Shown here: piece after piece, positions 8,578 to 64,000 of the stretch
Position numbering within the stretch: the stretch's first letter is position 1
Layout: every line of letters begins with the position of its first letter
Virus record (IMG/VR): IMGVR_UViG_3300032562_000003
Location: 124,001 to 188,000 of that record
Strand: one strand, 5' to 3'
Length of the DNA: 64,000 bases
Notes under the pieces: generated by a model
Database searches by the model: none
The model's input: the letters and a program-made list of their open reading frames with translations, nothing else
What the model was told of the DNA's origin: nothing
Program-made: the position numbers and the translations under genes

Positions 8578-9418
8578 ATGACTATTTATCTATACAAGAA
8601 AACCCATAACATAACTGGATTAAAATACTTAGGTAAAACCGCACAATCTAATCCATATAAGTATCCAGGATCCGGAAAAATGTAGAGGTCGCATATAAAA
8701 ACACATGGGTATGATGTTACTACTGAAATATTACGAGAGTGTCACTCTAAAGAAGAGGTAGCAGAATGGGGTTATACTACTCTAAACTGTGGAATATAGT
8801 AGACGAGCGGGATAAGAATGGGAAGAAAACGTGGGCTAATCTAAAGTTTGAAGAGGGCGACGGAGGTGCAACTGTTTTTGGTGACAGCCATCATTCTAAA
8901 ACTATTGAATTTAAAAATAGAATTGATCACGCATGGACTCCCGAAAAAAGAAAAAAACAAGGTGATCTGTCTCGATCACGATTTTCGCACATGTCTACTG
9001 AAGACAAAAAACATATAAGAAAAAAAGCAATCGACACTAGAACTAAAAATAACCCAGATTGGAGGAAAGACTTATCTGATAGAATGTTAGGGAAAACAAT
9101 CCTTCAAAATCTAAAGAAGTAATAGAAAAGATAGCAGAAAGTAAATCAAACTGGAATGACTCCTTTCGAGAATATGTAATCAGTAAAAATTCTGGAATTA
9201 ATCATTACAGAAACAACCCTAATTACAAATCAACTCAATTTGGAAAGGGGCACCCTAATTATAACCCCAATGTATACTCATTTAAAAATAAAAATACACT
9301 AGAAGAAGTTAGAATGACAGTGTTTGATTTTATAAAAACATACAACCTACATCAAGGAAATGTAAGTTTATTAATGTCTGGAAAAAGAAAATCTGTACGC
9401 GGGTGGATGTTATCTTAG
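8578..9418 (+). pseudogene. decayed GIY-YIG (Seg-like) homing endonuclease
   Basis: Starts MTIYLYKKTHNITGLKYLGKT, nearly identical to 17975..18682. TAG at 8683-8685 replaces the conserved Trp. Two 1-nt losses in G runs (8768-8771, 9090-9092). The third frame ends ...GNVSLLMSGKRKSVRGWMLS*. Confidence 0.85.
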
Positions 9419-53100: not shown

Positions 53101-54049
53101 AGGAACAGAATACTATGTTAGCGAAATAGTTAACGGCACCACATTTGTGGTGTCTGACACATATGATGGTCCATCTAAGACGCTAACGACATCAGGTCCC
53201 GCCACTATCAACGTAACACAATGGTCACAACAATACACTGATCGTATCTGGGTAACAGTTAATGGATTGAGAGTACCATCATCTAAGTTAAGAATAAATC
53301 CTGCAAATGAGGTCAGTATTCTAGCTGAGATTCAATCAACTGATAAAGTAATTATTACTAGTATGATTGCACACTGGACACCAGAAGAAATGACTTATAT
53401 GAATTTCGTAGACAAGAATGGAGTAGCATCGGTTTATAGATCAAATACGTTAACTAGAACTTGGTTAACTGAATCTATTCAAGACTTGACTACGGTGATT
53501 TACGTTAATGATGTAAACAGCGTTATCCAGGATGTAGTCTTTACTGCAACGGTACCTACTGTATCCGTCGACGGTTACTACTATATTGGATTGCCGGCGG
53601 ACAAGAGAATTCTCACTGCTGTATCTGTTGTAAATATTTCAACTACACCAAATCAAACTATCAGCAGCAATGATTATGAGGTTGTACTAGTAGATACTGC
53701 ACCAACACTAAAGATCACTCCAGGAAGCTACATTTCAACTGGCAACACCTTAACTATTAATGTACTTGAAGGAGATATCATCTACGTTAACGGAGAAGCT
53801 ATTAGATTTAATGCAGTTGATATTGCAAGTAATTCGTTGCTTGGTATTCAACGCGGGGTTAACGGTACTGCTAAACAATCTTATATACCAGCGTACACTG
53901 AAGTATTTGGATTATTGACTAGCAACAAGCTAGACGATGTTTACTATAATCAAACTTGGAACTCCTACACCTTCAATACAATAGACGGGGATCCACTACA
54001 AATCAGCACTACGACACCTGCATTATTCTTACAAACGGACATCACGTAA
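35156..54049 (+). CDS. giant 6297-aa virion protein (gp7-like wedge with appended adhesin-like modules)
   Basis: Uninterrupted ORF after gp6. Contains VKPYH (gp7-like), FG-GAP-like repeats, Asp-box repeats and at least 13 copies of a V-x-F...GG...YYV repeat. Confidence 0.75.
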   Translation: MARIRTITFLPEIFQTSTNAEFLSATLDQIVNPPNTMKIQGYVGSKFGYGVNATDNYVVEPTKTRVNYQLDPGVVFTKPNESVANDFISYPGIIDSIAMQDSITDNNSRLFKSQFYSWDSFTNLDKLINFNEYYWLPVGPPAVTISAATVYSTENYAVTSLPNGYEIALVGQPIGSINPTLGLIRGGTYTFAVNQSSQFWIQTDPGTSGYSPFQSNLTTRQVYGVDNNGASQGVVTFTVPQKNAQDQYIFPGNNTVDLVSTKLFDQVNGAVLKTFTDTDGVTYQGLNDIDGVTALEGLRIMFYYDGIPAEKGNTETFLSETPLDINSDVLVAPIVINVTSCDASAFTTDSTSQLVVGQTVTFNNPTFGGVTAGEVYYVHSIPTSGTFTIALTLDASSPLTLVPGSGTMVANINQGLYEESVASTVFEYYYLIEYIGDPKNPTIRLVPDGTIPVNQTITPLYGTQWNNIPFYRSPTGVINPIPVITAPLDVLYYQDGTSADSVGVIKIIDSNTTNTINVVTEILGNPNYTSSSGVVFTNGLKVNFQGDIIPTSYLQGQYYVQGVGTAIELVPVSSLVCTEDFTHGNYIPYDSTPYDISNYDSDLFIPTDKDYITIARNAINKNAWSRSNRWFHIDVINATAKYNNDPNIATTYATQANKAVRPIIEFYPNLKLYNSGSVGAAGIDFIDTHNTDALSTVAGSYNYYPDTEVLTTASASVVGVTAATSTTFSVDAANVSGTFQIGMYVADSSSILPNNTQITDITGTTTLTVTVSWPGAKNISSASNLSIVGSDTTLDNYALFPEARIVFAADSSSTVRNKIYVVNFSVIDPNTRPVITLTVAEDGNIVPDEQLAIKRGYYHQGTSYYYDGIKWIQAQQKVTVNQPPLFDVFDANGISFGDSSVYQSTSFKGCKLFAYSVGSGVNDPILGFPIAYSGIDNVGDISFDVSLNLDTFNYVSGYNPINQKVNTGYVYNYTSGTSYVRQLGWQTAIADSTQYQLFSFDFDPTNPTLSFQCDVAALPALATGETGWPRVKVYINNVYQAPTSYATVVGTNTTTITFNSSSSLPTTSTVVQVLVLSDQVSQIGYYDIPINLNNNPLNADLTTANVGDIRAQYRDIFINSPNTTGEIFGANNFRDCGNLVPYGTEIIQNSASLVLPGTFFRNTQHNLFDALMFNSREYIKYKQLLVYTVQNTDYVQRYTPSQILDSALDQITAAKSEINAFFWSDMLPSKAPYRTNTYTFNNQLDTSVYPLSNVYNFETANYSGVLVYVLRTVAGVVVERQLTSGIDYIISPDAPSLTIISPLGDGDKVIIKEYNQTYGSYIPNTPTKLGLYPSFYPEVVLDSDYTVPTYFIKGHDGSFTKLYGDYDETLGVLIDFRDQALLEFELRIYNNLKLSTTVPIERYEVVPGYFRSSTSTYSWNEFIQMYEPTFLNWIGQNRLDYKSQYYQKNNEFSYNYTNSGNKLDQAAIQQGYWRGVYEYFYDTTTPNETPWEMLGFANEPTWWADRYGPTPYTSDNGILWGDLEAGYIWNNGNPYTVPELARPGLSKIIPVDSNGDLLSPLIAIVGNYNPSTFQKDWVVGDDAPVELSYRRSSTWPFDLMRLFALTRPAEFFNLAVDLDNYKYNAEFNQYLVNDRSHLVPANIEIYGNGTAKTSYINWIVDYEKQQGVDATTNITTLLNNLDVRLVYRLAGYSDKTLLQFYVEKGSPNSNNATLLIPNESYSVLLYDNQPFDQIMFSGVVIQKNQGYWTVYGNSQTFAYFKTLKPINNGTYGSVDVLGTTVKYAKNYTDQVVLVPYGTKFYSTQGVVQFLMSYGAELESQGMLFNEVEQGIEVTWAQMAAEFLYWSMSGWEVGSLITLNPSATAINIDRPSAIVQPLTVQQTNFILNQNLYPIQLNDLCVERDDTLFHAHTLNQGDSMSYAQFNVSNFEHGIVFDNVTLFNDIIYNLTTGLRQNRIYARGVKTADWNGTVNAWGFILNQDNVLEWNGNLKYTKGVIVQYKNKYWTALKVIEPSATFNEQDWKLVNYNDIQKGMLSNASTRAYESTLYYDVYQANLEQDADLLAFSLIGYRPRDYLALVDLTDSTQVQVYQNLIKNKGTRNAVDAFQGATFPQGSISYDFYENWSILTKQYGGVLNENFVDFRINQTNLMGNPSIVSLTNGVYTVGSDQEVPLYNLFNYNTPPASPNVLSTLDTTVNSQLYPSAGYINVNDVKMSSYFFSGLPSAVDSTGAVVPINNFYVGEYFWLANFKNKWDVFRWTNIGQVIQVRNNTNGTATITFSSPHSLNKLDPMAIINFAQNVDGYYIVADVLNLYEVVINLSALNANQNSIQGRGLAFGFVSQRVASPAGIIPLASAENEFIKNTVWVDENTDGNWAVYRKSLNYAYQNQFEQADGGTFGSAVAYTSDMGYLIGDSGTGILYRYIYDSLAQAYLLKENKTGGTSFGSTIKYAQNLYAVSQPSGVSPAVTLYTLNHTVVTDRMLTYQTIAAPGGVTDWGSALAISGDTNWLYISDAQNNNVYVYRKQNIPLIAGYFVTGETYVITSLGSTDFTAIGAVDNKVGITFVATGAGAGTGTATQITYKQSTIISGSSLFSLGAGDGFGTALATSYDGSTLAVTAPFIDYSPTITNWGTTFVLQRTMQNFEAKQNSLPEQTTSFSLSWTPAAGATITASATSSVTNRITCSGSMTGFQINQPVVFAGSNFGSSNVSPNQVYYIHGISGSEISIKTSRSSTTPVNLTTAAGLSFSVYVQVDPLYVYLNGKLVTDDNYAVIGTSFIYYSSLIAGDILTVSDNQYFPAQQINSDYIDRTDIEFGYAVDMYKTGSTLLIGSPYEVDANDVEGAVYSYVNGGAEYGVVIGTNECNVTTNRTLLINGFAVNLSAGNAQSVANTINSSKIINVQAAATSDNKLIIQVINQNIAQINQKLTVYAYDSGTTLSELGINLYTKTQIIQSPHEQGASRFGSAIKINEFDSVIISAPVGTRYEGTFFDFTDDENLDNDTVFDNNATQFVDSYVNAGAVYMFDYIGLYNESLANPGAYVYAQSVNSKNIPYGQQPLYGTAIDFNENVVVVGSPNFYPVAVGGQVVVYNNATGVSDWSVYRNSAPIVDISKIQNTQIFSASTNQTLINLDYMDPLQGKLLGAARENLDFVSGTDPARYNSDLSTIIGSVWGAEHVGQLWFNTNNVRWMNYHQNDNVYNSKYWGAVFPGSDVAVYTWVASFVPPNSYPGPGAVYNPNLYVVSTVLNASNNAVPVYYFWVSNTNIIFEQTGKTLSDSVVASYISNPKGSGIAYMAPLLPNTFALYNSVDYFNANDSVFHIGFANGTTDDVAHQEYALIRENYQDDFLPGLPHGGTSAHTLAIQGGYTISETDVPYSLYAKLLDSLAGCDGAGAVVPNPWLPLAVQSGIRSRPNQSFFYDRYLAINNYLTYANTVLAQYPIAEIRPDATFLFQSGTYFNTADYWSYVNWWATGYSDSTKSSLQVPNYADLAALNVAVNTIVTVEQNGAGKFEVYRYDGYGVWTRIGLQNGTIAFDTSLWDYSSAKIGYGDNFFDTTPYDQYPSEETRYIVRALTEQIYISDLLIYRNTSLILLFDYIQSETTQSQNFLPWLNKTSLADVSHTIRELIPYEVYQTDNTAFLSGYINEVKPYHVVIKDFVFKYTGTDVYQGNITDFDLPATYNSSYQQYISPQLVYSNPNSQYEYLPTDSIWSTAPYTQWFQNHGVSITGQPNYNITVTTSYVSTSSTYIVVDNAHGFPINGTINIGNEIIGYSFVDRALNVLSGLVRGVNGTPIENHITGAQIYIDLPAALVLFGGRGYVEPPKVTAYIDTSIYPAPKTPAVLEAVMNLDSVLQINVIDPGEGYAVLPEIVIDPAEVIAFDNTAVNGTFHTIRLYAPNLQTGDAVLYKSGITASVGALANNQWYYINVLETVPTAIIALYTTYSDAINDKARVKIYPIGIGSDMTLSSGARASAITTALPIRENNTTIRFDRTTYGSQVQDWEAGAYYGSFFAGTLDNSSTTSSSSIGLESTEPPIDSILASAQGAVFEITDISNDQQLTWSSFIRYVSGTTASNHSITLIPQDNGGGQPNASGTTIGFYIGMPVKFQSTLSFGGLVSNQIYYVNTILSETEFTVSTTVGGPIFGVTDSVVGVYTMECFVGEVTNTAVMSINYPGILQVTATTATTNALTVPTSLVGTGGTLGFYTNLPVFFTEDVFGGIVANKTYYVTSVIDNQTFTMSATTNPVSTTAYSVDGSTDRVAVNDGTNFNINDIVVFTDMVIAGTSTTNFGGLVAGTFYYVSGVYLSSKEITLSATKNGAVLNLTTVVAASDTSAIMTNQKDTVALTTAVGSATMNVSLPISPGQINGQLFTIYETSGQYPNNIVSAGEVSSLISRSINATISAVNRIAVSASLGGTDFFYKNMPIRVTTNIGNLVAGTTYYIREYTGDGTNTVIEVTVTNTSSSGNVLSCGSTASLYIGMPIVFSGQSLGGIFVTETYYIQDIPSSTTFTLSLTVSGPAITLTNDNGVMTGAGDPFFTVSTTVNGSEFALSSDHTTVSTATQYVTGYTTFDLSYKLGGYSAVPTNAGSGFAVNNIITIPGTAVGGTSPANDITLEVNSVDALGGIINVIASGNVPSTSTKYYLKVISSNQLEVYSNPLLTVPVSGINFPFNGYTTTTVQSVSSNIITVNSTTGFNVNDAVVFTGNVSAGIVAGQTYYIVNNVNFTSNTLQISSTPGGTAITLSNASSLSYTMAKSGSYAFLPEPFYFNQSIVKFNNKVYICVISNNDKEFVIGKWEELDSGDRRLNAMDRVMGYYKPTVNMPGVDLTQLFDGVTYPNSIYLGNAFQPNQQFALDVVVQDQPFYPSQVNITAVEYHNNVYHAVANLPTYSALLTSADGITWAITQLANTDINVTNIVYNNGTYLISAANNATPILTSVDGLVWTVANTTEHSSQAAAYGNGCWISVGDNIVRSTDAITWNTVHTFDSIFEVELYGVSFVQTASFTGFVAVGNGLRYDYSTGVTQLVPTDIIITSADGITWTQVAPLTNKSLNSVVSNGTTIVALGENNVQYTSTDAINWFGNEALVTTFSSTNYIISTAPNAFTVNAAVQFSNSFSSINAGTTYYVKSIVSPTLVTISDTLGGSTKTLSADTVPINTLMYEYDANPSTVRDSVYVGGTFVSVGDNGLIKTSTDGYVWTLRSSGTTQNLNGITYDTDGITTFTVVGDNNTVLTSTDTIIWTDNSVFTVPPTVYDVKGADFPYGYGPEELVPGVVTDNLALTVVTRPGSNWDVTEYSHTGFNVVSLELAPTFGTQTVYTFAGAVQVPAQLTVQIIDPVTGLGTGITEGIDYTINWLNKTVILSTPLQFSPKKILRIDVYEVGNGDQLVQSSTDVNPIRVDDVTGFNEVYVDCNYSASVYQGSGVIRPGTSAIESQVLSTDSTTNRLTCTDISKFILNGPVTFLGVLFGGVVSETTYYVKSISTATDSIIISASIDPVTGLAGPAFDLVTASGDAMYVSIQSGNGQVWTTPIMYHNGNKLVLGATNIVIRTQSINNSLTTNSTFGFVPGTRITFSNTMFAGISPQTTYYVSSVINNNEFTISATNGGPVLPLPDTTGGAIFVTNDYAFGTQPNGIAAKIIFASDAYTTETDYIVYSLFGETTPQYGYAVPEIQYFTGTGSQTAFTLSNYVGENNPNNAVVEVNGVRKTVTTDYSINPNTNVITFTSAPVSNSSISVLTYNDTQQQYLTSQYGLTGTTVAPILSINTTLSPILATTTVTATSSTGNLITATSTAGFVVGQQIQFFGIAPLGGIKVDGTMYWVGSIISNTFTIKDQYGVAVPLSNASGTLLAEVGGISTTRVTTTIPHGFAENSLVRIDGTVGSIQLNNNIYYARVITDTVFDLYQSDVSGYTGYNPTLGATNYPVIGVSTYISGGYTWLTGSFNITTTTATATTSSNNTITVASTANLIVNTPVYFSENYTLNGTDLSFGGLVSGTEYYVSEIVNGTTFVVSDTYDGPSKTLTTSGPATINVTQWSQQYTDRIWVTVNGLRVPSSKLRINPANEVSILAEIQSTDKVIITSMIAHWTPEEMTYMNFVDKNGVASVYRSNTLTRTWLTESIQDLTTVIYVNDVNSVIQDVVFTATVPTVSVDGYYYIGLPADKRILTAVSVVNISTTPNQTISSNDYEVVLVDTAPTLKITPGSYISTGNTLTINVLEGDIIYVNGEAIRFNAVDIASNSLLGIQRGVNGTAKQSYIPAYTEVFGLLTSNKLDDVYYNQTWNSYTFNTIDGDPLQISTTTPALFLQTDIT

Positions 54050-54214: not shown

Positions 54215-54883
54215 GTGGGTATTATCTACATCACAGAAAATTTATACAACAAAGCGCACGGTATTATGCCATGGCGGTATATAGGAAGTGAGCAATACAA
54301 CAATGATAACTACTTAGGGTCAAGTATTGACCTAAAAAAAGACATAGCAGCGTTAGGTGCAGAAAACTTCAAGAAGATAATACTAGCCGATTTAGGTGAC
54401 ATTGATAACAAAGAGCTTCGCAGAATCGAGTCAATTGAATATTTGCAGCCGAACAATGTCCCCGCGGATGAAACGTACTACAACAACACAGATAAGTATG
54501 CGCCGGCCGGCGCACGACTGGGCATGAAGCATACTAAAGTTTTTAAACGAACACAAGCATGGAAAGATAGTAGACGAGGCTACAGGCATACCGATGATGC
54601 CAAAGCAAGCATGGCATTGAAAAAAATTGGCACTACAGCAAGCAAACAAACCAAACAGTTAATGTCAGCAGCCCGATCAGGTGAAAACAACCCGAATGCA
54701 TTGAGTTGGACTATAACCTCCCCCGCCGGTGAAACCTTCAATGTTAAGGGACTTGCTAAGTGGGCAAAGGACAACAACTATAAATACAGAGATATATATC
54801 ATAATAAAAACGGTTGGACCGCAGTAAAACACGGGGTTGGATTAGGCGGCCGAAAGAAAAGGGATCATATCAGTGGAATTTAA
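54215..54883 (+). mobile_element. free-standing GIY-YIG homing endonuclease
   Basis: GIIYITEN...WRYIGS, YLGSS; NUMOD3-like GYRHTDDAKASM and SGENNP. Confidence 0.75.
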
Positions 54884-55522: not shown

Positions 55523-57304
55523 GTGTCGTATACTATTTACAAATCGGACGGAACTTTATTGACGACTATTCCAGATGGTGTCGTCAACATAACCAGCACG
55601 CCGCTAAGTCTGCCAGGCCGCAACTACGCAGGTTACGGGCAAGTATTCGACACAAACTATGTACATCAACTAGAAAATTTTGCAAATAGTACTTTACCTG
55701 CAAACGCTCTGAGAGGTCAGTTGTGGTTTAATACTACCAATAGCACGCTGTATGTTTGTCCGACTGACGGTGAAACCAATCAAAGCAATTGGATCGCGCT
55801 CCTTACCGCTAACAATAGCGGAAATATTAATACAGGAAATTTGAACGCTTCTAGCAACATATATGCAAACAACGCCTCATTAACTAATAATCTTAATTCC
55901 AATGTAATATATACCAACTACTTAACCGTAAATGTACAAGCACAGATAGCAAATGCAAATATATCAAATGCAAATATAGCAAATTCTAATCTCACTGGTA
56001 CTGCAAATATAGTAACATTGCGGACAAATAATATTACTACAGGATCAACATCTACCAATGGTAATATAATCGGTACATGGACTGCAAATGGAACAGGAAC
56101 TGCTAACGGTGTATCTGGAACTGCACTGTGGGTTACTGGTGGAAATTTAGTAATCAGCGGCCCGGGCTCGCTGGGCATTAGTACTGATAATTATTATTAC
56201 GCGAACGGAGTACCCATTTCTTTTGCGGGAACCTATTCTAACTCAAATGTTAATTCATATTTACCTACATATACTGGTAATGTTGGCGCACCTAGCGGAG
56301 CAACGACTTTCAATGGTGTATCTCTAAATTCGGGATCAAACTTGATTGCAGGTACAATTACGGGCAACTGGACTCTTTCTGCTGGATCAAATATTAATGG
56401 TGTGATCGTTTCCGGTGGAAACGTAGTTGGACCAGTAGCGTCTGCGACATCTGCAGGTACAGCGACAACTGCTACGTCAGCGATCACGGCCGGCACTGTT
56501 ACTACTGCTGCGCAACCTAATATAACTTCTGTAGGTACACTATCATCTCTATCTGTGTTAGGCACGATCACTAGCGGGTCTTGGAACGGTAATATCGTCA
56601 CACCAAATTACGGTGGTACAGGGTTGGCAGCAACTCCAAGCAATGGTCAGTTGCTTATAGGTAATGGATCTGGCTTCTCGCTTAGTGGGCTTACAGCAGG
56701 GTCTGGAGTAACCATCACTAACACGCCGGGCGGAATAACTATTTCGGTTACCGGATCATCTGTTCCTTCAGGTCTCATATCGATGTGGTCCGGTTCTATT
56801 GCTTCTATTCCATCTGGGTGGGTCCTTTGTAACGGACAAAACGGAACTCCGGATCTTAGAGATAGGTTTGTGATAGGCGCAGGAGGCTCTTACTCTCCGG
56901 GTTCTGCCGGCGGCTCAACTACACTAAGCACTTCGGTATCGGTAAACGGGCACACATTAACCGTAGATGAAATACCCGGTCACCAGCATACCTTCGATAC
57001 CAATAGCAGTTATACTGGGATTTCGGTTAGCGATTCTGGACACGCACATCCTCTATATAATATAGTTGATAATAATGGTCCGTGGGCAGTCAATAGAGCT
57101 TTTGGACAATACAATGGTCAACTAGAAATAATAGACACAGCTACTGGTGTTAGTTATGCAGCCATCAGCACGTCTGACCCTTCACACTATCATAGTGGAA
57201 CTACCAACAGTACAGGATCAGGCTACGCTCACAATCACACTGCATCAGCTACTACAACCGGTATTCCTCCGTACTACGCATTAGCATTCATAATGAAAAC
57301 CTAA
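55523..57304 (+). CDS. tail fibre with collar domain and His-x-His needle tip
   Basis: VPSGLISMWSG...GWVLCNG...TPDLRDRFVIGAG collar; HQH, HAH, HYH, HNH motifs; ends PPYYALAFIMK. Confidence 0.8.
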   Translation: MSYTIYKSDGTLLTTIPDGVVNITSTPLSLPGRNYAGYGQVFDTNYVHQLENFANSTLPANALRGQLWFNTTNSTLYVCPTDGETNQSNWIALLTANNSGNINTGNLNASSNIYANNASLTNNLNSNVIYTNYLTVNVQAQIANANISNANIANSNLTGTANIVTLRTNNITTGSTSTNGNIIGTWTANGTGTANGVSGTALWVTGGNLVISGPGSLGISTDNYYYANGVPISFAGTYSNSNVNSYLPTYTGNVGAPSGATTFNGVSLNSGSNLIAGTITGNWTLSAGSNINGVIVSGGNVVGPVASATSAGTATTATSAITAGTVTTAAQPNITSVGTLSSLSVLGTITSGSWNGNIVTPNYGGTGLAATPSNGQLLIGNGSGFSLSGLTAGSGVTITNTPGGITISVTGSSVPSGLISMWSGSIASIPSGWVLCNGQNGTPDLRDRFVIGAGGSYSPGSAGGSTTLSTSVSVNGHTLTVDEIPGHQHTFDTNSSYTGISVSDSGHAHPLYNIVDNNGPWAVNRAFGQYNGQLEIIDTATGVSYAAISTSDPSHYHSGTTNSTGSGYAHNHTASATTTGIPPYYALAFIMKT

Positions 57305-57355: not shown

Positions 57356-58579
57356 ATGGCATATACAATCGTAAAAAGTGATGGTACGACTCTCACTACT
57401 ATCGCTGACGGTACAATCAACACGACTAGTACTAGTCTGGGTTTGCCGGGCCGAAACTATGCAGGATATGGTCAACAATTAGACACAAACTTTGTTCATC
57501 AGCTAGAAAATTTTGCATTCAGCCAACCTCCGTCTAATCCCATCAGAGGCCAACTCTGGTTCAACACAGTATCAAATACCCTCTTGGTCTGTCCGGCCGA
57601 CGGAACTACTAATGCTGCTGCTTGGCTGTCTCTTGCGCAATCAGGTTCAGCCGGTACTACAACGTTTGGCAGTATATCAGTAACTGGCAATGCTGCTGCA
57701 AACAACATGGCTGTTACAAACAATCTTACTGCCACGACCGGTACGTTCTTCAATCTAACAGCCACCGCAAACGCAAACGTTGCTAATCTAAACGTATCAT
57801 CTACTGCAAACATTAGTACTTTGGTGACAACTGCAATCACATCAGGTAGCGCATCTACTAATGGAACACTAACTGGTGTTTGGACCGCAAACGGAACCGG
57901 AACTGCAAATGGTGTTGCGGGAACATCGATGTGGGTTACCGGCGGCAACCTAGTGATTACCGGATCTGGAATTGGTATTCGTACTGATAATTATTATTAT
58001 GCAAACGGTGCATCTATTCCGATCGGCGGCTCATATGGCAATTCTAATGTCGCATCATACTTGCCAACGTATAACGGTGCGATATTAACTACAACTACGC
58101 AAGCTACTACATTAACTACTGGAGCAAACACAACCGCCGGAACGCTTACAGGTACCTGGACACTATCATCGGGTTCACAACTACAAGCGACTTACGCTGA
58201 CTTGGCCGAAAGATTTGCAGCAGACGATGTATATTCTCCAGGTACAGTAGTACAATTAGGCGGAACCAAAGAAATAACAGCAGTGCAGTATGAACTTTCT
58301 GAAGATGTATTCGGTGTTATTTCCGATACTGCTGCATATCTAATGAATGCCGGCGCCGGCAATGATACTACTCATCCCCCTGTTGCAGTTTCCGGTAGAG
58401 TAGAGGTTAAAGTTACTGGTAAAGTACTAAAAGGACAGCGATTAGTAAGTGCAGGTAACGGTATTGCTCGTGCTGCTCACTCCGGTGAAGCAACCGCATT
58501 TAATACTATAGGAAGAGCATTAGCAGATAAAACCACAGATGGCGAAGGTGTTGTAGAAGCTATCGTTATGATTCGATAA
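57356..58579 (+). CDS. tail fibre paralog with a C-terminal peptidase-G2/IMC-like chaperone domain
   Basis: N-terminus shared with 55523; ATYADLAERF...PGTVV...VAVSGRVEVKVTG. Confidence 0.75.
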   Translation: MAYTIVKSDGTTLTTIADGTINTTSTSLGLPGRNYAGYGQQLDTNFVHQLENFAFSQPPSNPIRGQLWFNTVSNTLLVCPADGTTNAAAWLSLAQSGSAGTTTFGSISVTGNAAANNMAVTNNLTATTGTFFNLTATANANVANLNVSSTANISTLVTTAITSGSASTNGTLTGVWTANGTGTANGVAGTSMWVTGGNLVITGSGIGIRTDNYYYANGASIPIGGSYGNSNVASYLPTYNGAILTTTTQATTLTTGANTTAGTLTGTWTLSSGSQLQATYADLAERFAADDVYSPGTVVQLGGTKEITAVQYELSEDVFGVISDTAAYLMNAGAGNDTTHPPVAVSGRVEVKVTGKVLKGQRLVSAGNGIARAAHSGEATAFNTIGRALADKTTDGEGVVEAIVMIR

Positions 58580-58591
58580 TAAGGAATAGAG

Positions 58592-59545
58592 ATGACTTAC
58601 TCACAGTATGGAACTATACAGGCTTCTGACTATAATACCTTTGTAGGGGGCAATCCTACTGGAAACTCGTCATTAAATGCTGTTTGGGCGACCGGATCAG
58701 GTTCAGCGGGGTATGGACAAACTGCTCTCGCTAATGTTGCTGTAGGTGCAACTGTAGCAGCATCAGATTGGGCAAACTTAGTCAACAAAACATCTAACTC
58801 AGCAAGTCACCAAGGAACATCAATTTCGGCAGTAACGGCACCATCTACTGGTGGTATAGTAACATACCTATCTGGTATTCCCACGAACATAACTTCAATA
58901 TTTAGCAACAGATTTAACGCCGCATCGCAAGGTAGCACGTCAGCCAATACTGCAACGTATGGATCATCTTGGTCACATGCCATTACTTTTGCACATACAG
59001 TTTCATTTGCTAATGGTGACGCTGCTCGGTACTTCTTTAACTCCGGTGGACAAATTAAATTGACAATGAGTCATTCTCCTACCACAACTACTATGGATAC
59101 GGTATTTCACAATCTAGCATCAAATGTGGGCACTATTGTAATGTCATCCCCCACTTCCGGCACTGTGACAATCGTAGGTGTTAGTTATAACGGCATTACT
59201 AAAATAGGTGGTGGAGGCAATTCTCCAACCCTTCTAGCCAACACCGGATATTATGCACTTACTACGTCTAACGCAGCAGTGTTCACTCAAGTTGCAACAG
59301 GTGCACCTACTCACTATACAAATACTGATATAGTAGTAAATATCAAGTCAAACGGTACGCAAGGATCAAATGGTGATGTCGGCAACATTATAACTATCTA
59401 TTCAACATGGGGCGAATTAGCGAATACCGGACTTACTGTTTCTTCTGGTTCAGCTGTCAGTTGTACGGCAGTGGCACCAGAAACAACTTATATAGCCAAT
59501 ACATGGGGCGCTATTACTCTTTCGGGCACCGTAACCGGTTCATAA
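58592..59545 (+). CDS. Ser/Thr/Gly-rich virion structural protein
   Basis: ARYFFNSGGQI motif; follows the fibre genes. Confidence 0.55.
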   Translation: MTYSQYGTIQASDYNTFVGGNPTGNSSLNAVWATGSGSAGYGQTALANVAVGATVAASDWANLVNKTSNSASHQGTSISAVTAPSTGGIVTYLSGIPTNITSIFSNRFNAASQGSTSANTATYGSSWSHAITFAHTVSFANGDAARYFFNSGGQIKLTMSHSPTTTTMDTVFHNLASNVGTIVMSSPTSGTVTIVGVSYNGITKIGGGGNSPTLLANTGYYALTTSNAAVFTQVATGAPTHYTNTDIVVNIKSNGTQGSNGDVGNIITIYSTWGELANTGLTVSSGSAVSCTAVAPETTYIANTWGAITLSGTVTGS

Positions 59546-59569: not shown

Positions 59570-59576
59570 CTAAATA
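59570..59576 (+). promoter_or_regulatory. late promoter CTAAATA ahead of the glycosyltransferase cluster
   Basis: TAAATA core followed by SD aggag and ATG 59592. Confidence 0.55.
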
Positions 59577-59591
59577 CTTTAGGAGTATAAG

Positions 59592-59897
59592 ATGGACACT
59601 AAGACACTACTTGCTGATGCTAAAGCAAGATTTAACCACAATTCAGCCAAAGCATATCTAGAAGAAAAGTACACAGCTAAACTTATTGTAGCTGCGCAAG
59701 GTGGCCTCTGGAAGGCAGATGCAGAAACTATTAGTTTTCTGAGTTCATTTGATACCGAAACCCTGGTTTTAATAGATACCTTTAATAATCCAGTAGAAGT
59801 AAATCGTGCTGAATTGCTGAAAACATTGCGTCTCGCATATATAGAAGCCACTATGCAATGGTATGCTGAATGGAAAGCTCTAGAAAGTAACAGATGA
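59592..59897 (+). CDS. hypothetical protein
   Basis: ORF with strong SD; ATGA overlap with the next gene. Confidence 0.7.
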   Translation: MDTKTLLADAKARFNHNSAKAYLEEKYTAKLIVAAQGGLWKADAETISFLSSFDTETLVLIDTFNNPVEVNRAELLKTLRLAYIEATMQWYAEWKALESNR

Positions 59898-60712
59898 CGC
59901 GAGGTATAATACTCTTTGCCTTCAATTCTATCAAATACAACTACTATGAAATGGCAGAGTTCACAGCTAAAAGAGTAAATCATTTTTTAGGATTGCCAGT
60001 TACACTAGTTACTGACGAAGAATCATTGCCAACTAAAACAACCTATGTTTGGGATAAGGTAATTACAGTAACTCCAAATAAAGATAATTTTCGTACATGG
60101 GGCCAGTGGATCAACAAAGGCAGGTATCAAGCATATGAGTTGAGTCCATATGATGAAACAATACTACTTGATGTAGACTACGTGGTTAATTCTGACAAGC
60201 TACTAAAAACTTTTGAAGTATACGATGACTTTTGTTGTCACAATACTACTAAATTTTTAATGCAGCCAGCTGCACCGCAAGATTATCTCTCTGATTATAG
60301 CTATCCAATACTATGGGCTACGGTTATTGCTTTTAAAAAGACCGATAGAGCAAATCAAATCTTTAATACTATTAAAATGATACAGAATAACTACCAACAC
60401 TATGAAAATATCCATCGATTCGTCGGTGGAACATATCGTAATGACTTTGCATTAACGCTGGCATTAAGAATAGTTAATGGACATTCTAATCCAATCACTG
60501 ATTATCTTCCATGGAACTTAGTTCATATTGGAAATAACACACAGATATATGCTAACAACGATACTTCGTTAAACACTGAATACACAGTAATGTTTGACAG
60601 CACTAAAAACGGTAAGAATAAAAAAGAATACATGCTTATTAAGGATATGGATTTTCACATTCTTGTTAAAGAAATATACATCGATATGATAAAAGGAAAA
60701 GATCATGAGTAA
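59894..60712 (+). CDS. putative GT-A fold glycosyltransferase
   Basis: AYELSPYDETILLDVDY (DxD motif), FAL/RNDF segment. Confidence 0.65.
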   Translation: MTRGIILFAFNSIKYNYYEMAEFTAKRVNHFLGLPVTLVTDEESLPTKTTYVWDKVITVTPNKDNFRTWGQWINKGRYQAYELSPYDETILLDVDYVVNSDKLLKTFEVYDDFCCHNTTKFLMQPAAPQDYLSDYSYPILWATVIAFKKTDRANQIFNTIKMIQNNYQHYENIHRFVGGTYRNDFALTLALRIVNGHSNPITDYLPWNLVHIGNNTQIYANNDTSLNTEYTVMFDSTKNGKNKKEYMLIKDMDFHILVKEIYIDMIKGKDHE

Positions 60713-60947
60713 ACCAATCATTGACGCTGCCACATATGAAGTGGCCAAACAGTATGGTGTGGCTGTAGCCAACTTACATTTAGTAGAACAGTCCCGAGAT
60801 AAAACGATAGAAGTAGCCACCCGTAGAGCCTTAGTAGAAAAATATCATGAATTATTGATCATGAAAGTGCAAGAATGTATTAAGGATCAAGAAGATGAAC
60901 TAGACGATCAAACTAGAGTATTTGAAAAATTCGGAATTTCTTTCTAA
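60705..60947 (+). CDS. hypothetical protein
   Basis: 80-aa ORF coupled to both neighbours. Confidence 0.6.
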   Translation: MSKPIIDAATYEVAKQYGVAVANLHLVEQSRDKTIEVATRRALVEKYHELLIMKVQECIKDQEDELDDQTRVFEKFGISF

Positions 60948-61702
60948 TGAATAGAGGATTTGTGATTATGGCACAGGGTGACAAATATGTCACATGTGCT
61001 AAAGCATTGGAAGCAAGCATTAAACTAACGATGCCCGATACCAACGTGACCATAATCACAACTGACATGTTGCCATATGGAGATCAGGCACCAAATACGA
61101 ATTGGAAACTGCAAAACGATTGGCAAGTATACGACGCCTCTCCGTATGAGTACACCATCAAGTTGGAAGCTGATATGTACATTCCGCAATCGATTGATTA
61201 CTGGTGGGACGTTCTTAAGGAACGTGATGTTGTAGTATCTACTCATGTCAGAAATTTCAAGCAAGAAATATCTGATGTTACTTACTATCGTAAGTTTATC
61301 GTTGACAACAATCTTCCTGACTGTTACAATGCGATCACATATTTTAGAAAATCGGATTTGGCTAAACAGTTTTTTGATATAGTACGAAAAGTCTTTGAAA
61401 ATTGGGACGAAATTCGTGGCACTTTAAAGTGCAACGTTGATGAACCTGCTACCACAGACTGGGTATATGCGATTGCATGTCATGTGATAGGCGCGGAGAA
61501 AACTACTTTGCCTCAGTTCAAGCCTTATGGGATGGTGCACATGAAGCAGTTCATCAACGGACTATTTACAGACAACTGGACAGATACTCTAATATATGAG
61601 ATTCTACCACATACATTTAGAATCAACACTATCGCACAGATGTATCCAGTTCACTATTATAATAAAGAATTCGCTAATACTATATTAGAGAATATAAAAT
61701 GA
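60947..61702 (+). CDS. putative glycosyltransferase, paralog of 59894
   Basis: RGFVIMA start; VYDASPYEYTIKLEADMY (ExD variant). Confidence 0.6.
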   Translation: MNRGFVIMAQGDKYVTCAKALEASIKLTMPDTNVTIITTDMLPYGDQAPNTNWKLQNDWQVYDASPYEYTIKLEADMYIPQSIDYWWDVLKERDVVVSTHVRNFKQEISDVTYYRKFIVDNNLPDCYNAITYFRKSDLAKQFFDIVRKVFENWDEIRGTLKCNVDEPATTDWVYAIACHVIGAEKTTLPQFKPYGMVHMKQFINGLFTDNWTDTLIYEILPHTFRINTIAQMYPVHYYNKEFANTILENIK

Positions 61703-62022
61703 ACGAAGAACATATAATCATCTGGGAGCCGCCGGTAATAGTTCCTCCTACGTTTAGATTATACTATGATGATAGGGGAAAGGTACTGTTCTATACATGT
61801 GAAAAGCCTGAAGGTAACTTCATAGAAATCGATGCTCAAACGTATGCAGAATGCCGACATGATTTAAGAGTAATCGATGGTAAGTTAGTTAGACAAGGTG
61901 CTACTACAGTTTCACGATTGCGCAAGAGTGACAAAGGAACGCTGTGCGAGCAAGAAGATATGAGTATTATTACGACTGACAATGACGGACAATATTGGGA
62001 ATTAGAAACATATGAACTCTAA
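61699..62022 (+). CDS. hypothetical protein
   Basis: 107-aa ORF overlapping its neighbours in operon fashion. Confidence 0.6.
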   Translation: MNEEHIIIWEPPVIVPPTFRLYYDDRGKVLFYTCEKPEGNFIEIDAQTYAECRHDLRVIDGKLVRQGATTVSRLRKSDKGTLCEQEDMSIITTDNDGQYWELETYEL

Positions 62023-62212
62023 AGAATTAGACATCAAACCTGGAATGAAGATTAAATTTGATGGACCATGGTGGAATAATAAAGATATACACTATACTGT
62101 AGTAGAAGCATCCTGGTATAACAAAGAAAAGGAATCTACCGCAGTACAACTCAAGCTTGAGGAAATTGATCATATTACAGTTGTTTCTAGAAACGGTATA
62201 AAGATTGTATGA
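62012..62212 (+). CDS. hypothetical protein
   Basis: 66-aa ORF filling the gap, ATGA-coupled to the next gene. Confidence 0.55.
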   Translation: MNSKELDIKPGMKIKFDGPWWNNKDIHYTVVEASWYNKEKESTAVQLKLEEIDHITVVSRNGIKIV

Positions 62213-63150
62213 GTGACATAGTAGACATTGCCGACTTAGACGTAATCTACTTAAGTTACGATGAACCCCAGAAAGAGGAATTCTGGCTCAAGATTAAGAA
62301 CATGGTTCCGTGGGCCAAGAGAGTCGATGGAGTAAAGGGCAGCGATGCGGCACACAAGGCAGCAGCAGAAGCTTCCGACACTGAACGCTTCATTCTAATT
62401 GACGGTGACAATCTTCCTAACGAAGACTTCTTCAACATTCAGTTAGATTTTACAGATAAGGATCCTAGCTACAAGTTAGCACAATATCGTTGGCGAGCTA
62501 TTAATGCTATTAACGGTCTTCGTTACGGTAACGGTGGTATCTCTAGCTGGACTAAGACATATGTAGCGAACATGCACACACATGAAAGTTCAGACGGTGA
62601 TCCAACCACTACGGTAGATTTCTGCATGGATTCCAGTAACAATCTGTATTGGGCAATGCACGACTGTTATTCAGTAACTTACCCAAACTATACCCCTTTC
62701 CAAGCCTGGAGAGCCGGATTTAGGGAGGGCGTAAAGATGGTTCTCGATAAGGGTGCAAAGCCCAGCATTGATGATTTTAAAGCTAGAGTGTCAAGTCGCA
62801 ATCTAAACAATCTGACAATCTGGCACAACGTAGGTGCGGACGTAGAGAATGGTTATTGGGCAATATACGGTGCTCGGCTCGGAACGCAGATGACGATGCT
62901 GACTGACTGGGATCACACCAATGTCATGTGGTTCGACAACTTTCCTGAGTTATGGGACAAGCACAAGAATAATCCGCATCATTACGCAGAAGTTATCGGA
63001 GAAGAACTTCAAGACAAGTTGGATTTGCCAATCTGTACGCTAAGTGCAGACCAAAGTAAGTTCTTCAAGAGACATTATAATGCAGATAAGTATAATTTAG
63101 GTCCTTTAGTTAAAGAGATGGACGTGATTCGTAAAATTGAAGGATGGTAA
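62209..63150 (+). CDS. putative glycosyltransferase-like protein
   Basis: VIYLSYDEP, AHKAAA, FILIDGDN (DxD), AWRAGFREGVKM. Confidence 0.55.
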   Translation: MSDIVDIADLDVIYLSYDEPQKEEFWLKIKNMVPWAKRVDGVKGSDAAHKAAAEASDTERFILIDGDNLPNEDFFNIQLDFTDKDPSYKLAQYRWRAINAINGLRYGNGGISSWTKTYVANMHTHESSDGDPTTTVDFCMDSSNNLYWAMHDCYSVTYPNYTPFQAWRAGFREGVKMVLDKGAKPSIDDFKARVSSRNLNNLTIWHNVGADVENGYWAIYGARLGTQMTMLTDWDHTNVMWFDNFPELWDKHKNNPHHYAEVIGEELQDKLDLPICTLSADQSKFFKRHYNADKYNLGPLVKEMDVIRKIEGW

Positions 63151-63153
63151 AAT

Positions 63154-64000
63154 ATGTCAAATAATGGTTATCAACAACATTTAGAAAATGTTAAAAATGA
63201 ACTAGATTCTGTTAGCAAAACATTCTGTGCTGCTAAGTGGAAACAAGTAACTATGCATCTACAAAATGGACACACGCATAGTTGCCACCATCCTAAAACG
63301 CATCATGTTCCTGTACAAGAAATTCAAATAAATCCTACTGCACTGCACAATAGTAATTATAAAAAATTACAAAGGAAGATGATGCTTGAAGGTGAGCGTC
63401 CAGCAGAATGTGATTATTGCTGGCGAGTAGAGGATCAAGGTGATAGCCATAGTGACAGAATATACAAGAGTGCAGATAAATGGGCTAATCCTTTTATACA
63501 GGATATCGCCAATAAGCCATGGGATGATGATGTTGATCCAAGCTATGTAGAAGTAAGCTTTGGTAATGTATGCAATTTCAAATGCAGTTATTGTGCACCT
63601 CATATCAGTAGTCAATGGATGGAAGAGATCGAACGGTTCGGACCTTATCCTACCACAGATAGGTTCAATAATCTAGATTGGTTGAAAAGCCAAAATATGA
63701 TGCCTATTCTCAATAGAGAAGAAAATCCATATGTAGAGGCTTTCTGGAAGTGGTGGCCAAAGATGTATAATAGTCTACAGCACTTCAGAATTACCGGAGG
63801 CGAGCCGCTACTAAACAAGAACACCTTCAAGGTGCTGGATTATATCATCGATAACCCTAATCCAAATCTAGAAGTTGCCATCAATACGAACATGAATGTT
63901 CCTGATGATATTTTCAATAGGTTCTTAGAAAAGATCAAGATAATATCTGAAGAAAAAAAACTGAAAAACATCAAGATATTCACAAGTGCTGAAGCACACG
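63154..64000 (+). CDS. radical SAM protein with N-terminal twitch/SPASM-like Cys motifs (3' truncated)
   Basis: Hand translation from ATG 63154: CAAKW, HSCHH, ECDYCW, CNFKCSYC (CxxxCxxC, 63571-63594), ITGGEPLL, INTN. Not in the ORF track. Confidence 0.88.
   Translation, partial: MSNNGYQQHLENVKNELDSVSKTFCAAKWKQVTMHLQNGHTHSCHHPKTHHVPVQEIQINPTALHNSNYKKLQRKMMLEGERPAECDYCWRVEDQGDSHSDRIYKSADKWANPFIQDIANKPWDDDVDPSYVEVSFGNVCNFKCSYCAPHISSQWMEEIERFGPYPTTDRFNNLDWLKSQNMMPILNREENPYVEAFWKWWPKMYNSLQHFRITGGEPLLNKNTFKVLDYIIDNPNPNLEVAINTNMNVPDDIFNRFLEKIKIISEEKKLKNIKIFTSAEAH

What the first reader, a model, noticed from the sequence alone, without database searches (positions are those of the whole stretch)
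59570..64000. Late-promoter glycosyltransferase and radical-SAM operon directly behind the tail-fibre genes
SEEN: three GT-like genes (DVD, EAD and DGD acidic motifs; two are paralogs sharing SPY(D/E)xTIxL) and a twitch-type radical SAM gene, tightly coupled and preceded by a TAAATA late promoter. The upstream fibres and the giant protein are extremely Ser/Thr/Asn-rich. KNOWN: T-even glucosyltransferases modify DNA and are expressed before or during replication; virion glycosylation is documented in some actinophages. INFERENCE: late timing and position suggest glycosylation of virion proteins with a radical-SAM-tailored sugar, rather than DNA modification.
Basis: inference. Interest (0 to 1): 0.6.

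Follow-up and report, generated by a model that had tools for sequence, protein, structure and literature searches.

The report
Fibre-linked glycosyltransferase and radical-SAM operon
A freshwater jumbo phage carries, directly behind its tail-fibre genes, a deeply conserved set of three sugar-transferring enzymes and an unusual radical-SAM enzyme that most likely decorate virion fibres with a tailored glycan, though the target remains unproven.

Summary
Window 59592-64000 is the start of a roughly 16-kb, same-strand, overlapping-gene operon in a 259-kb lake-water jumbo-phage contig.

- **Glycosyltransferases:** AlphaFold models show two paralogous GT8-like retaining GT-A enzymes (272 and 251 aa) and a distant GT2-like GT-A enzyme (313 aa). 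Their DxD, ExD and DGD motifs are invariant in 80 relatives.
- **Radical SAM:** the gene is a full member of NCBIfam N_Twi_rSAM, with an N-terminal twitch domain.
- **Promoter:** TAAATA is the most enriched upstream hexamer in the genome. It marks portal, terminase and virion genes, not replication genes.
- **Beyond the window:** the operon continues into genes for sugar or polyol activation, SGNH-like enzymes and a carbamoyltransferase.
- **Synteny:** the order fibre, 101 aa, GT8, GT8, 107 aa, GT2, rSAM is fixed in about 77 of 80 related contigs and in Ralstonia phage RsoM2USA.

The DNA-modification route looks unlikely. ThyA is canonical, and complete relatives have no thymidylate-synthase homologue or only a canonical-scoring one, and no TET/JBP gene.

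Virion glycosylation is the best reading (about 0.45) but is unproven. A sister clade drives the same operon from a terminator plus a sigma-70-like promoter. The rSAM family also expands independently of the glycosyltransferases, up to 7 tandem copies and 17 per genome.

The parts
55523..57304 (+). Tail fibre protein, 593 aa
   Evidence: phmmer matches solved tail-fibre chains 9nxk (E 2.4e-11) and 9qgo (E 5.8e-11). Weak match to the Pfam Collar domain.
57356..58579 (+). Fibre protein, 407 aa, with its own late motif (GATAAATAAG, 22 nt upstream)
   Evidence: Sub-threshold intramolecular-chaperone domain, Peptidase_G2, E 3e-5. N-terminal residues 22-93 are shared with the 593-aa fibre and with RsoM2USA ORF355; the matching N-terminal part of ORF355 finds proteins annotated as tail fibres in PA5oct-like phages. 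24% S+T. Present in 76 of 80 related loci.
58592..59545 (+). Ser/Thr/Gly/Asn-rich fibre or virion structural protein, 317 aa, directly upstream of the operon
   Evidence: 29.3% S+T, rank 2 of 177 proteins. Homologous to RsoM2USA ORF355 residues 100-316 and to a region annotated as virion structural protein in the PA5oct RefSeq record. Present in 79 of 80 loci.
59570..59577 (+). Late-type promoter motif CTAAATAC, followed by AGGAG at 59581-59585
   Evidence: Sequence read directly. TAAATA is enriched 8.1-fold upstream of genes and marks portal, terminase and virion genes but not replication genes. The block ATCTAAATACTnnTAGGAG is conserved in 32 of 77 relatives. No terminator-like site lies between the fibre gene and the operon.
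59592..59897 (+). Conserved 101-aa protein of unknown role (first gene of the operon)
   Evidence: Present in 77 of 80 loci. No family match. RsoM2USA ORF354 occupies the same position.
59894..60712 (+). GT8-like retaining GT-A glycosyltransferase, 272 aa, DxD at residues 93-95
   Evidence: AF2 model pLDDT 82. Foldseek E 2e-7 to alpha-1,3-GalT and glycogenin. VIA Z 16.0 to glycogenin, 14.7 to GlyE, 14.6 to LgtC. D93 and D95 are invariant in 80 relatives. Orthologue is RsoM2USA ORF353.
60705..60947 (+). 80-aa ORF found only in this phage
   Evidence: Seen only in L012 and L013, the same phage. In relatives the two GT8-like genes abut.
60947..61702 (+). Paralogous GT8-like glycosyltransferase, 251 aa, ExD at residues 74-76
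   Evidence: BLASTP E 3e-9 to the 272-aa protein. phrog_1903, E 1e-10. E is kept in 80 of 81 and D in 81 of 81 aligned sequences. Orthologue is RsoM2USA ORF352.
61699..62022 (+). Conserved 107-aa protein of unknown role
   Evidence: Present in 66 of 80 loci, always just before the GT2-like gene.
62012..62212 (+). 66-aa ORF found only in this phage
   Evidence: Found only in L012 and L013.
62209..63150 (+). Distant GT2-like GT-A glycosyltransferase with a C-terminal helical domain, 313 aa, DGD at residues 65-67
   Evidence: AF2 model pLDDT 94.9. GT-A hits at Z 9.4-8 over residues 1-160. Best Foldseek hit is 2p6w. The family has 1204 representatives at 50% identity, some fused to GT28/GT1 GT-B domains or Sel1 repeats. 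DGD is invariant. This is the most conserved operon gene, 56-100% identical.
63154..64000 (+). First 282 codons of a 465-aa N-terminal-twitch radical SAM enzyme (the gene ends 551 bases past the window)
   Evidence: NF033640, 343.8 bits against a cut-off of 170. Pfam Radical_SAM. Cysteine pattern read from the translation. Falls in the clade of array-position-1 copies. Orthologue is RsoM2USA ORF349, 39% identity.

Best explanation
This is a cytoplasmic glycosylation module dedicated to the virion's distal fibres.

In this phage it is transcribed with, and just after, the fibre genes from a T4-type late promoter. Two GT8-like retaining transferases and one GT2-like transferase, all soluble, would build a short glycan on the Ser/Thr-rich fibre proteins (317 aa, 407 aa, possibly others) before assembly. 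The GT2-like enzyme has a helical C-terminal domain that could hold a protein acceptor. The position-1 twitch radical SAM enzyme, translationally coupled to the GT2-like gene, would carry out one radical C-H step, either on a sugar of that glycan or on the fibre itself.

The part of the operon beyond the window supplies and decorates the donor. It holds a fused kinase/nucleotidyltransferase, a cupin, a shikimate-dehydrogenase-like reductase, a GatZ-like enzyme, two DUF7796 proteins, two DUF6071 proteins (the second with a sub-threshold GDSL/SGNH match) and an O-carbamoyltransferase.

Shown: enzyme folds, conserved motifs, family membership, gene order, promoter class, solubility, and absence of a hydroxy(methyl)pyrimidine route. 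Inferred: the acceptor, the sugar and the radical SAM reaction.
For: - GT-A folds with invariant metal-binding acidic motifs.
- The order fibre407, fibre317, 101 aa, GT8, GT8, 107 aa, GT2, rSAM is kept in about 77 of 80 loci at 29-100% identity. It recurs in RsoM2USA (ORF355 to ORF348) at 30-40% identity.
- A late motif lies 15 nt upstream and no terminator follows the fibre gene. The motif class marks structural and packaging genes.
- None of the 23 operon proteins has a hydrophobic segment (maximum KD19 1.33), so there is no flippase, polymerase or exporter.
- ThyA keeps Leu143, Asp169 and Asn177 and passes the thyA equivalog cut-offs.
- Complete relatives have no thymidylate-synthase homologue (G407, G408) or a single one scoring like canonical ThyA (G406), and no TET/JBP gene.
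- The fibres are the most Ser/Thr-rich proteins nearby.
- Relatives of the GT2-like enzyme are fused to Sel1 repeats.
- Top structural neighbours include the protein-glycosylating enzymes glycogenin, GlyE, the Skp1 galactosyltransferase, UGGT and PBCV-1 A64R.
- A distant phage-like contig (L010) places this rSAM family beside GT7-like transferases, a lectin domain and a tail sheath gene.
Against: - There is no direct evidence for the acceptor.
- GT8 and GT2 neighbours also include LOS, polysaccharide and teichoic-acid enzymes (LgtC, TarS/TarP, BcsA).
- The fibre-GT complex prediction gave no answer.
- In 26 of 77 relatives the operon sits behind a terminator and a sigma-70-like promoter while the fibre keeps its late motif, so co-timing with fibres is not conserved.
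- The rSAM family also occurs away from any GT gene: at least 9 copies outside the main fibre-linked array in G408, several next to replication genes.
- PA5oct-like phages have a homologue of the 317-aa protein but no detectable GT or rSAM homologue.
- Ser/Thr-rich composition is usual for fibres.
Confidence: 0.45

Rival explanations
1. The enzymes remodel a host envelope glycan (LPS core, capsule or teichoic-acid precursor) from the cytoplasmic face. This could block superinfection or stop progeny sticking to debris. The position beside the receptor-binding fibres would then reflect a receptor-related gene island.
For: GT8 neighbours include LgtC, and GT2 neighbours include TarS, TarP, RmlT and ArnC. 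Core LPS transferases are likewise soluble or peripheral. The sister clade's sigma-70-like promoter would allow early expression. The kinase/nucleotidyltransferase resembles LicC/LicA-type enzymes that decorate surface glycans. One nearest atlas cluster of the DUF7796 protein is auto-named capsular polysaccharide biosynthesis protein.
Against: In this phage the operon has a late promoter and reads on from the fibre genes, which leaves little time for export. There is no membrane protein, flippase, polymerase or lipid-carrier priming transferase. The lineage looks lytic and T4- or Rak2-like, not a seroconverting temperate phage.
Confidence: 0.15
2. The operon hypermodifies phage DNA after replication: glycosylation of a modified base, with radical SAM tailoring as in some thymidine hypermodification pathways.
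For: Phage GTs are classically DNA-modifying. Multi-sugar DNA glycans and arabinosylated 5-hydroxycytosine are known (PMC13326640; bioRxiv 10.1101/2023.12.21.572611). Late DNA modification has a precedent in Mu Mom (own knowledge). Early-type promoters in the sister clade would fit.
Against: The known DNA glycosylation routes read here start from a thymidylate-synthase homologue with N177D, L143D/E or D169N changes, or from a cytosine methyltransferase plus a TET-type dioxygenase. The only homologue in this contig is canonical. G407 (100% complete) and G408 (92%) have none, and G406 has a single homologue scoring like canonical ThyA. No TET/JBP gene and no C5 methyltransferase in this contig. 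The DLP3 and RB69 DNA arabinosyltransferases resemble GT-B enzymes; these are GT-A.
Confidence: 0.07
3. The GTs and radical SAM enzymes act on something other than the virion: a small molecule, an RNA, or a host protein modified for takeover or counter-defence. The expansion of the rSAM family would reflect an arms race unrelated to fibres.
For: Up to 17 rSAM paralogues per genome, many inserted singly between core and replication genes without GT neighbours. In a Bacteroidota chromosome (G083) the family sits among five PhyH dioxygenases, a WelO5-like enzyme and a methyltransferase, a natural-product-like setting. Fold neighbours include host-protein-glycosylating toxins such as TcdA, Lgt1 and SetA. 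The carbamoyltransferase, cyclitol-type dehydrogenase and twitch rSAM recall aminoglycoside-type tailoring (own knowledge).
Against: The position-1 rSAM and the three GTs are fixed beside fibre genes over very long divergence, including RsoM2USA. This phage uses a late promoter. The same G083 locus also holds an 842-aa secreted protein with a fibre-type intramolecular chaperone domain. The second bacterial locus (G155) has GT2 and GT-C-like genes.
Confidence: 0.2

Closest known systems
Chlorovirus PBCV-1 capsid glycosylation (A64R and partners)
   Same: Virus-encoded, soluble, cytoplasmic GT-A enzymes that glycosylate a virion protein without host secretory machinery. A64R (2p6w) is the best Foldseek hit of the 313-aa model (E 7.8e-5) and scores Z 13.1 against the 272-aa model.
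   Different: PBCV-1 is a eukaryotic virus, and sequence identity is only 10-15%. TM-scores are low for the 313-aa protein (0.29 and 0.41). PBCV-1 has no radical SAM partner. The acceptor here is unproven.
Mycobacteriophage virion O-glycosylation (Freeman et al. 2023, cited in PMC12619734)
   Same: Phage-encoded glycosyltransferases that decorate virion proteins.
   Different: That system is in actinophages, where the glycans sit on capsid and tail-tube C-termini. No homology to it was tested here. It has no radical SAM enzyme and no linked sugar-activation module.
Serine-rich-repeat adhesin glycosylation in Gram-positive cocci (GtfA/B with GT8 enzymes such as GlyE)
   Same: Several soluble GTs, including GT8-fold enzymes, decorate a Ser/Thr-rich fibrous protein in the cytoplasm. 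GlyE is the third-best structural match of the 272-aa model (Z 14.7).
   Different: That is a bacterial system with a dedicated export pathway. It is an analogy of logic only, not shown homology of the system.
T-even DNA glucosyltransferases and DLP3/RB69 DNA arabinosyltransferases
   Same: Phage-encoded GTs that use nucleotide sugars.
   Different: The DLP3 and RB69 enzymes resemble GT-B glycosyltransferases and depend on a specialised thymidylate-synthase homologue (PMC13326640); that the T4 enzymes are GT-B-fold early genes is own knowledge. Here the folds are GT-A, ThyA is canonical and the promoter is late.
NCBIfam NF033640 N_Twi_rSAM (twitch domain-containing radical SAM protein)
   Same: Full-length member: 343.8 bits against a cut-off of 170, with an N-terminal CX13GX4C...CX2C and a CX3CX2C.
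   Different: No paper describing the family's reaction turned up in the searches made. The phage setting, the fibre linkage and the tandem expansion have no description in the searched literature.
Twitch/SPASM radical SAM enzymes such as BtrN, MoaA and SkfB
   Same: A radical SAM core plus an auxiliary-cluster cysteine motif of the CX9-15GX4C type. BtrN acts on an aminocyclitol sugar and SkfB on a peptide (own knowledge), which are the two options considered here.
   Different: Here the auxiliary motif is N-terminal rather than C-terminal. No structure was predicted. Only weak sequence matches were found: MoaA E 1e-9 over about 40 residues.

Membership tests
CAZy GT8 (272- and 251-aa proteins) | GT-A fold most similar to GT8 members | tested here: met
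   VIA Z 16.0 to glycogenin, 14.7 to GlyE, 14.6 to LgtC, 13.9 to LARGE1. 141 chains score Z of 8 or more. Foldseek E 2e-7. Only the 272-aa protein was modelled.
CAZy GT8 (272- and 251-aa proteins) | DxD metal-binding motif after beta-4 | tested here: met
   DxD (272 aa) and ExD (251 aa) are invariant in 80 relatives. The motif follows strand 88-92 in the model.
CAZy GT8 (272- and 251-aa proteins) | Sequence-level membership (a Pfam GT8-family match) | tested here: not met
   No Pfam family at E up to 0.1 and no NCBIfam family. The proteins are GT8-like by fold only.
CAZy GT8 (272- and 251-aa proteins) | Retaining mechanism and downstream metal-binding His | tested here: inconclusive
   His211 and Gly213 are invariant in 30 homologues, but the spacing differs from the HxxGxxKPW motif recalled from memory. 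The mechanism cannot be tested computationally.
CAZy GT2 (313-aa protein) | GT-A fold with a DxD motif | tested here: met
   Z 9.4-8 to GT-A enzymes over residues 1-160. DGD is invariant.
CAZy GT2 (313-aa protein) | Match to Pfam Glycos_transf_2 (PF00535) | tested here: not met
   No Pfam hit for the window protein. Two longer relatives give only sub-threshold hits, 19.5 and 17.4 bits against a cut-off of 23.3.
NCBIfam N_Twi_rSAM (NF033640) | Whole-protein score above the curated cut-off | tested here: met
   343.8 bits against 170, E 1.4e-102, covering model positions 1-398.
NCBIfam N_Twi_rSAM (NF033640) | CX3CX2C radical SAM motif plus N-terminal twitch cysteines | tested here: met
   C140, C144 and C147, with C25, C44, C86 and C89 as the only other cysteines. 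All 261 paralogues in 80 loci keep both features. A bacterial member gives a Pfam SPASM hit at residues 41-104.
T4-type late promoter | TATAAATA-like motif shortly upstream of late genes, enriched and specific to that class | tested here: met
   TAAATA lies upstream of 66 of 304 ORFs, 8.1-fold enrichment. It is on portal, terminase and virion genes and absent from polymerase, ligase and helicase genes. The local motif CTAAATAC matches 6 of 8 positions of the T4 consensus.
T4-type late promoter | gp55-type late sigma factor and late transcript timing | not tested
   No family accession was at hand for gp55. No RNA runs hold this phage.
Phage DNA glycosylation systems | Specialised thymidylate-synthase homologue or TET/JBP dioxygenase that makes the acceptor base | tested here: not met
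   ThyA is canonical. G407 and G408 have none, and G406 has one homologue scoring like canonical ThyA. No TET/JBP gene. This contig is only 73% complete.
Virion protein glycosylation systems | Glycan demonstrated on a virion protein | not testable with these tools
   Needs glycoproteomics. The RsoM2USA virion study identified bands by LC-MS/MS but, in the passages read, reported no glycan analysis.

The most novel reading that the evidence does not exclude
The fibre-linked operon is the core of an enzymatic surface-diversification system. Conserved glycosyltransferases lay down a glycan on the fibres. An expandable family of N-terminal-twitch radical SAM enzymes (1 to 7 in tandem, up to 17 per genome, all with intact cluster motifs), or in this phage a swapped-in sugar-activation, acyl and carbamoyl module, then rewrites it by radical C-H chemistry. 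Related phages would thus present chemically different fibres. This would be a new role for radical SAM enzymes and a new route to host-range or defence-evasion variation in phages.
Probability: 0.2. Interest if true: 0.85.

Novelty: new variant of a known kind. Interest (0 to 1): 0.66.

Why it matters
Virion glycosylation in phages has been documented mainly in actinophages, and nothing like it is reported for jumbo myoviruses of Gram-negative or freshwater hosts.

This module is not a curiosity of one contig. The GT2-like protein alone has more than 8000 clusters at 90% identity and 1204 representatives at 50% identity. At least 582 viral contigs carry it.

If the fibres are glycosylated, adsorption, host range, stability and recognition by defences in an abundant lake-phage lineage would depend on phage-made glycans. 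It would also give a first functional handle on the uncharacterised N_Twi_rSAM family. A cultured relative, RsoM2USA, is available for direct tests.

Tried and rejected
- **Family scans.** Pfam, PHROGs and NCBIfam gave no named family for the three GT-like genes. Only structure prediction resolved them.
- **PDB sequence searches.** phmmer or hmmsearch against PDB sequences gave nothing significant for the 313-aa family (GmaR E 0.15), the rSAM, the DUF7796 or DUF6071 proteins, or the 407- and 317-aa fibres.
- **Complex prediction.** The 317-aa fibre with the 313-aa GT returned no answer (score 0.00), which is not evidence either way.
- **Nucleotide similarity.** Megablast to cultured phages found no match.
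- **Literature.** Searches for the DUF families and for rSAM together with tail fibre and glycosyltransferase found no description. The 'moraphage' paper notes four core GT orthogroups, but its genomes reach only 307 kb with Bacteroidota hosts, and identity with this lineage was not established.
- **RNA evidence.** No RNA sequencing run holds the region.
- **Rejected argument.** I first thought the 317-aa fibre domain occurs only in phages that carry the module. That is false: PA5oct-like phages have the domain without the module.
- **MAG loci.** L006-L008 and L011 hold rSAM pairs without these GTs.
- **Fold searches.** The atlas and BFVD searches added only uncharacterised viral relatives and generic viral GT-A proteins.

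Full report
**Context.** The window is bases 124001-188000 of a 258,859-bp IMG/VR viral contig, estimated 73% complete. The stretch is held by 20 lake or freshwater DNA runs and by no RNA run. The genome has a T4- or Rak2-like organisation, with a 6297-aa ORF and several fibre genes just upstream of the finding. The only cultured phage with homologues of the operon genes is Ralstonia jumbo phage RsoM2USA.

**The observation.**
- From 59592 onward, eight + strand ORFs overlap by 1-11 nt or are 3 nt apart.
- Family scans gave no named family for the three GT-like genes.
- Using 79 diverse homologues from an exhaustive search, the 313-aa protein folds with pLDDT 94.9. Residues 1-160 form a GT-A domain with Z 9.4-8 to B4GALNT1, a Leptospira GT, WrtF, CHSY3, STIV A197 and SpsA. 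The best Foldseek hit is the PBCV-1 capsid glycosyltransferase, E 7.8e-5. The helical C-terminal half has no match.
- Longer relatives of this protein carry GT28/GT1-type GT-B domains or Sel1 repeats.
- The 272-aa protein folds with pLDDT 82. It matches retaining GT-A enzymes: glycogenin Z 16.0, GlyE 14.7, LgtC 14.6, LARGE1 13.9.
- The 251-aa protein is its paralogue, E 3e-9.
- DxD, ExD and DGD are invariant across 80 relatives at 29-100% identity.
- The radical SAM gene runs 551 bases past the window (465 aa). It is a full member of NF033640 N_Twi_rSAM. Its only cysteines besides CX3CX2C form an N-terminal CX13GX4C...CX2C.

**Promoter.**
- CTAAATAC lies 15 nt before the first ATG, followed by AGGAG.
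- TAAATA is the most enriched hexamer upstream of ORFs: 66 of 304, 8.1-fold.
- Large genes carrying it include the portal, the large terminase, three virion structural proteins and a protease. Large genes lacking it include DNA polymerase, ligase, DnaB-like helicase and AAA proteases.
- No terminator-like site separates the fibre gene from the operon.
- The late-promoter call is therefore sound for this phage.

**Beyond the window (locus L004).** The operon continues on the same strand:
- two DUF7796-like paralogues plus a truncated third;
- two DUF6071 proteins, the second with a sub-threshold GDSL/SGNH match;
- a cupin;
- a 530-aa nucleotidyltransferase plus APH-type kinase fusion, whose relatives are labelled LicC/choline-kinase-like or NDP-sugar pyrophosphorylase;
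- a shikimate-dehydrogenase-like protein;
- a GatZ/KbaZ-like protein;
- a NodU/CmcH-type carbamoyltransferase;
- an HNH endonuclease;
- an 846-aa protein whose C-terminus is a paralogue of the 313-aa GT.

None of the 23 proteins has a membrane-spanning segment.

**Conservation.**
- A scan of viral contigs found at least 582 loci, and 80 were analysed.
- Nearly all keep the order: giant protein, 208 aa, fibre407, fibre317, 101 aa, GT8-like, GT8-like, 107 aa, GT2-like, rSAM.
- RsoM2USA keeps the same order, from ORF355 (a fibre homologue) to ORF348, at 30-40% identity. This block lies a few genes from its tail sheath gene.
- The sugar-activation and decoration module is accessory. It occurs in only 4 of the 80 loci.
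- In most relatives its place is taken by 2-7 tandem, strongly diverged (22-37% identical), full-length rSAM paralogues. All 261 have intact cluster motifs.
- The window's rSAM belongs to the clade of first-position copies. RsoM2USA ORF349 joins at the next well-supported node, support 0.98.

**Points against a simple 'late, therefore virion' reading.**
- In 26 of 77 loci, all from the more distant clade, the late motif before the 101-aa gene is replaced by a GC hairpin with a T-run and a sigma-70-like TTTACT-N17-TATAAT. The fibre gene upstream still has TAAATA in 24 of 25 of these.
- Complete relatives hold many further rSAM copies away from any GT. G408 has 17 above cut-off, several between replication genes. 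G407 has 7 and G406 has 1.
- PA5oct-like phages have a homologue of the 317-aa protein but no detectable homologue of the 313-aa GT, the 272-aa GT or the rSAM.

**The DNA alternative.**
- The contig's only thymidylate-synthase homologue passes the thyA equivalog cut-offs. It keeps Leu143, Asp169 and Asn177, the positions that change in hydroxymethyl- and hydroxy-dCMP synthases.
- G407 (100% complete) and G408 (92%) have no such homologue, and G406 (100%) has a single one scoring like canonical ThyA.
- No TET/JBP gene was found in the contig or in G406-G408, and no C5 methyltransferase in the contig.

**The rSAM family elsewhere.**
- It is rare in Bacteroidota genomes: 4 of 401 above cut-off.
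- In G083, two copies sit with five PhyH dioxygenases, a WelO5-like enzyme, a methyltransferase, a GDSL protein and an 842-aa type-IX-secreted protein that carries a fibre-type chaperone domain.
- In G155, four copies sit with a GDSL protein, a methyltransferase-GT2 fusion and a GT-C-like enzyme.
- A phage-like contig in a Clostridia MAG (L010) pairs it with GT7-like enzymes, a lectin domain and a tail sheath gene.
- Together these contexts point to glycan or fibre-protein modification, but they do not settle which.

**Verdict.** The best explanation is a cytoplasmic fibre-glycosylation module with a radical SAM tailoring step, at confidence about 0.45. The rivals are host-glycan remodelling (0.15), another target such as a metabolite, RNA or host protein (0.20), and DNA hypermodification (0.07). 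The enzymes are of known kinds. The fibre-locked combination with N-terminal-twitch rSAM enzymes and their expansion is not described in the literature searched.

Noticed in passing
L015:10934-20418 (7 tandem copies). G408 positions listed; loci L114-L121.: The N-terminal-twitch radical SAM family is massively expanded in relatives. Arrays of 4-7 diverged, intact paralogues follow the GT2-like gene. One 320-kb genome has 17 copies above the family cut-off, many inserted singly between conserved core genes, including replication genes.
   Followed up: partly
Relatives L037-L091, intergenic region before the 101-aa gene (for example L044:7730-7790): In the sister clade the operon is preceded by a GC-rich hairpin terminator and a near-consensus sigma-70-type promoter (TTTACT-N17-TATAAT) ending 5-10 nt before the ATG, which suggests a leaderless or very short-leader transcript. 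Promoter class has been swapped between clades.
   Followed up: partly
window 35156-54049 (+): A 6297-aa ORF preceded by GATAAATAC 57 nt upstream. It has 20% Ser+Thr. Its C-terminal 800 residues are conserved in 28 related loci. It was not analysed further.
   Followed up: no
window 54215-54883 (+); L004:16347-17030 (+); window 9415-12474 (-): Homing-endonuclease-type genes flank the fibre/GT region: GIY-YIG/NUMOD3 before it and HNH after it. HNH copies sit inside the operon in L014 and L036. The 1019-aa portal ORF itself contains an HNH-like stretch at residues 468-555. The region looks like a recombination hotspot.
   Followed up: no
L112 (G083:C2:1208001-1228000): A Bacteroidota chromosomal locus holds two N_Twi-type rSAM genes, five PhyH dioxygenases, a WelO5-like halogenase or hydroxylase, a methyltransferase, a reductive-dehalogenase-like Fe-S protein, a GDSL protein and an 842-aa secreted protein with Peptidase_S74 chaperone and type-IX sorting domains.
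   Followed up: partly
window 60705-60947 and 62012-62212 (+): The two small ORFs (80 and 66 aa) lying between the GT genes occur only in this phage. In relatives the flanking genes abut, so these are recent insertions or non-coding spacers.
   Followed up: partly
L004:17063-19603 (+), just past the operon: An 846-aa protein with a late-type motif 5 nt upstream. Its C-terminal 220 residues are a paralogue of the 313-aa GT (E 7e-9). Homologues of 646-1132 aa occur in relatives. The N-terminal 620 residues have no match.
   Followed up: no
L006, L007, L008, L009, L011 (contigs filed under Bdellovibrionales, Deltaproteobacteria, Proteobacteria, Crocinitomicaceae and Bacteriovoracaceae MAGs): These short MAG contigs carry close homologues (39-61% identity) of the phage rSAM, often in tandem pairs. 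G003 (the genome holding L009) has 10 matches to the rSAM family spread over several contigs. They look like phage contigs binned into bacterial MAGs.
   Followed up: partly
L001:1585-2562 (RsoM2USA ORF358): This gene lies between the tail sheath gene and the fibre/GT block of RsoM2USA. It begins with a Rossmann GxxGxxG motif typical of NAD-dependent sugar epimerases and dehydratases, which hints at a sugar-nucleotide enzyme there too. No family scan was run.
   Followed up: no
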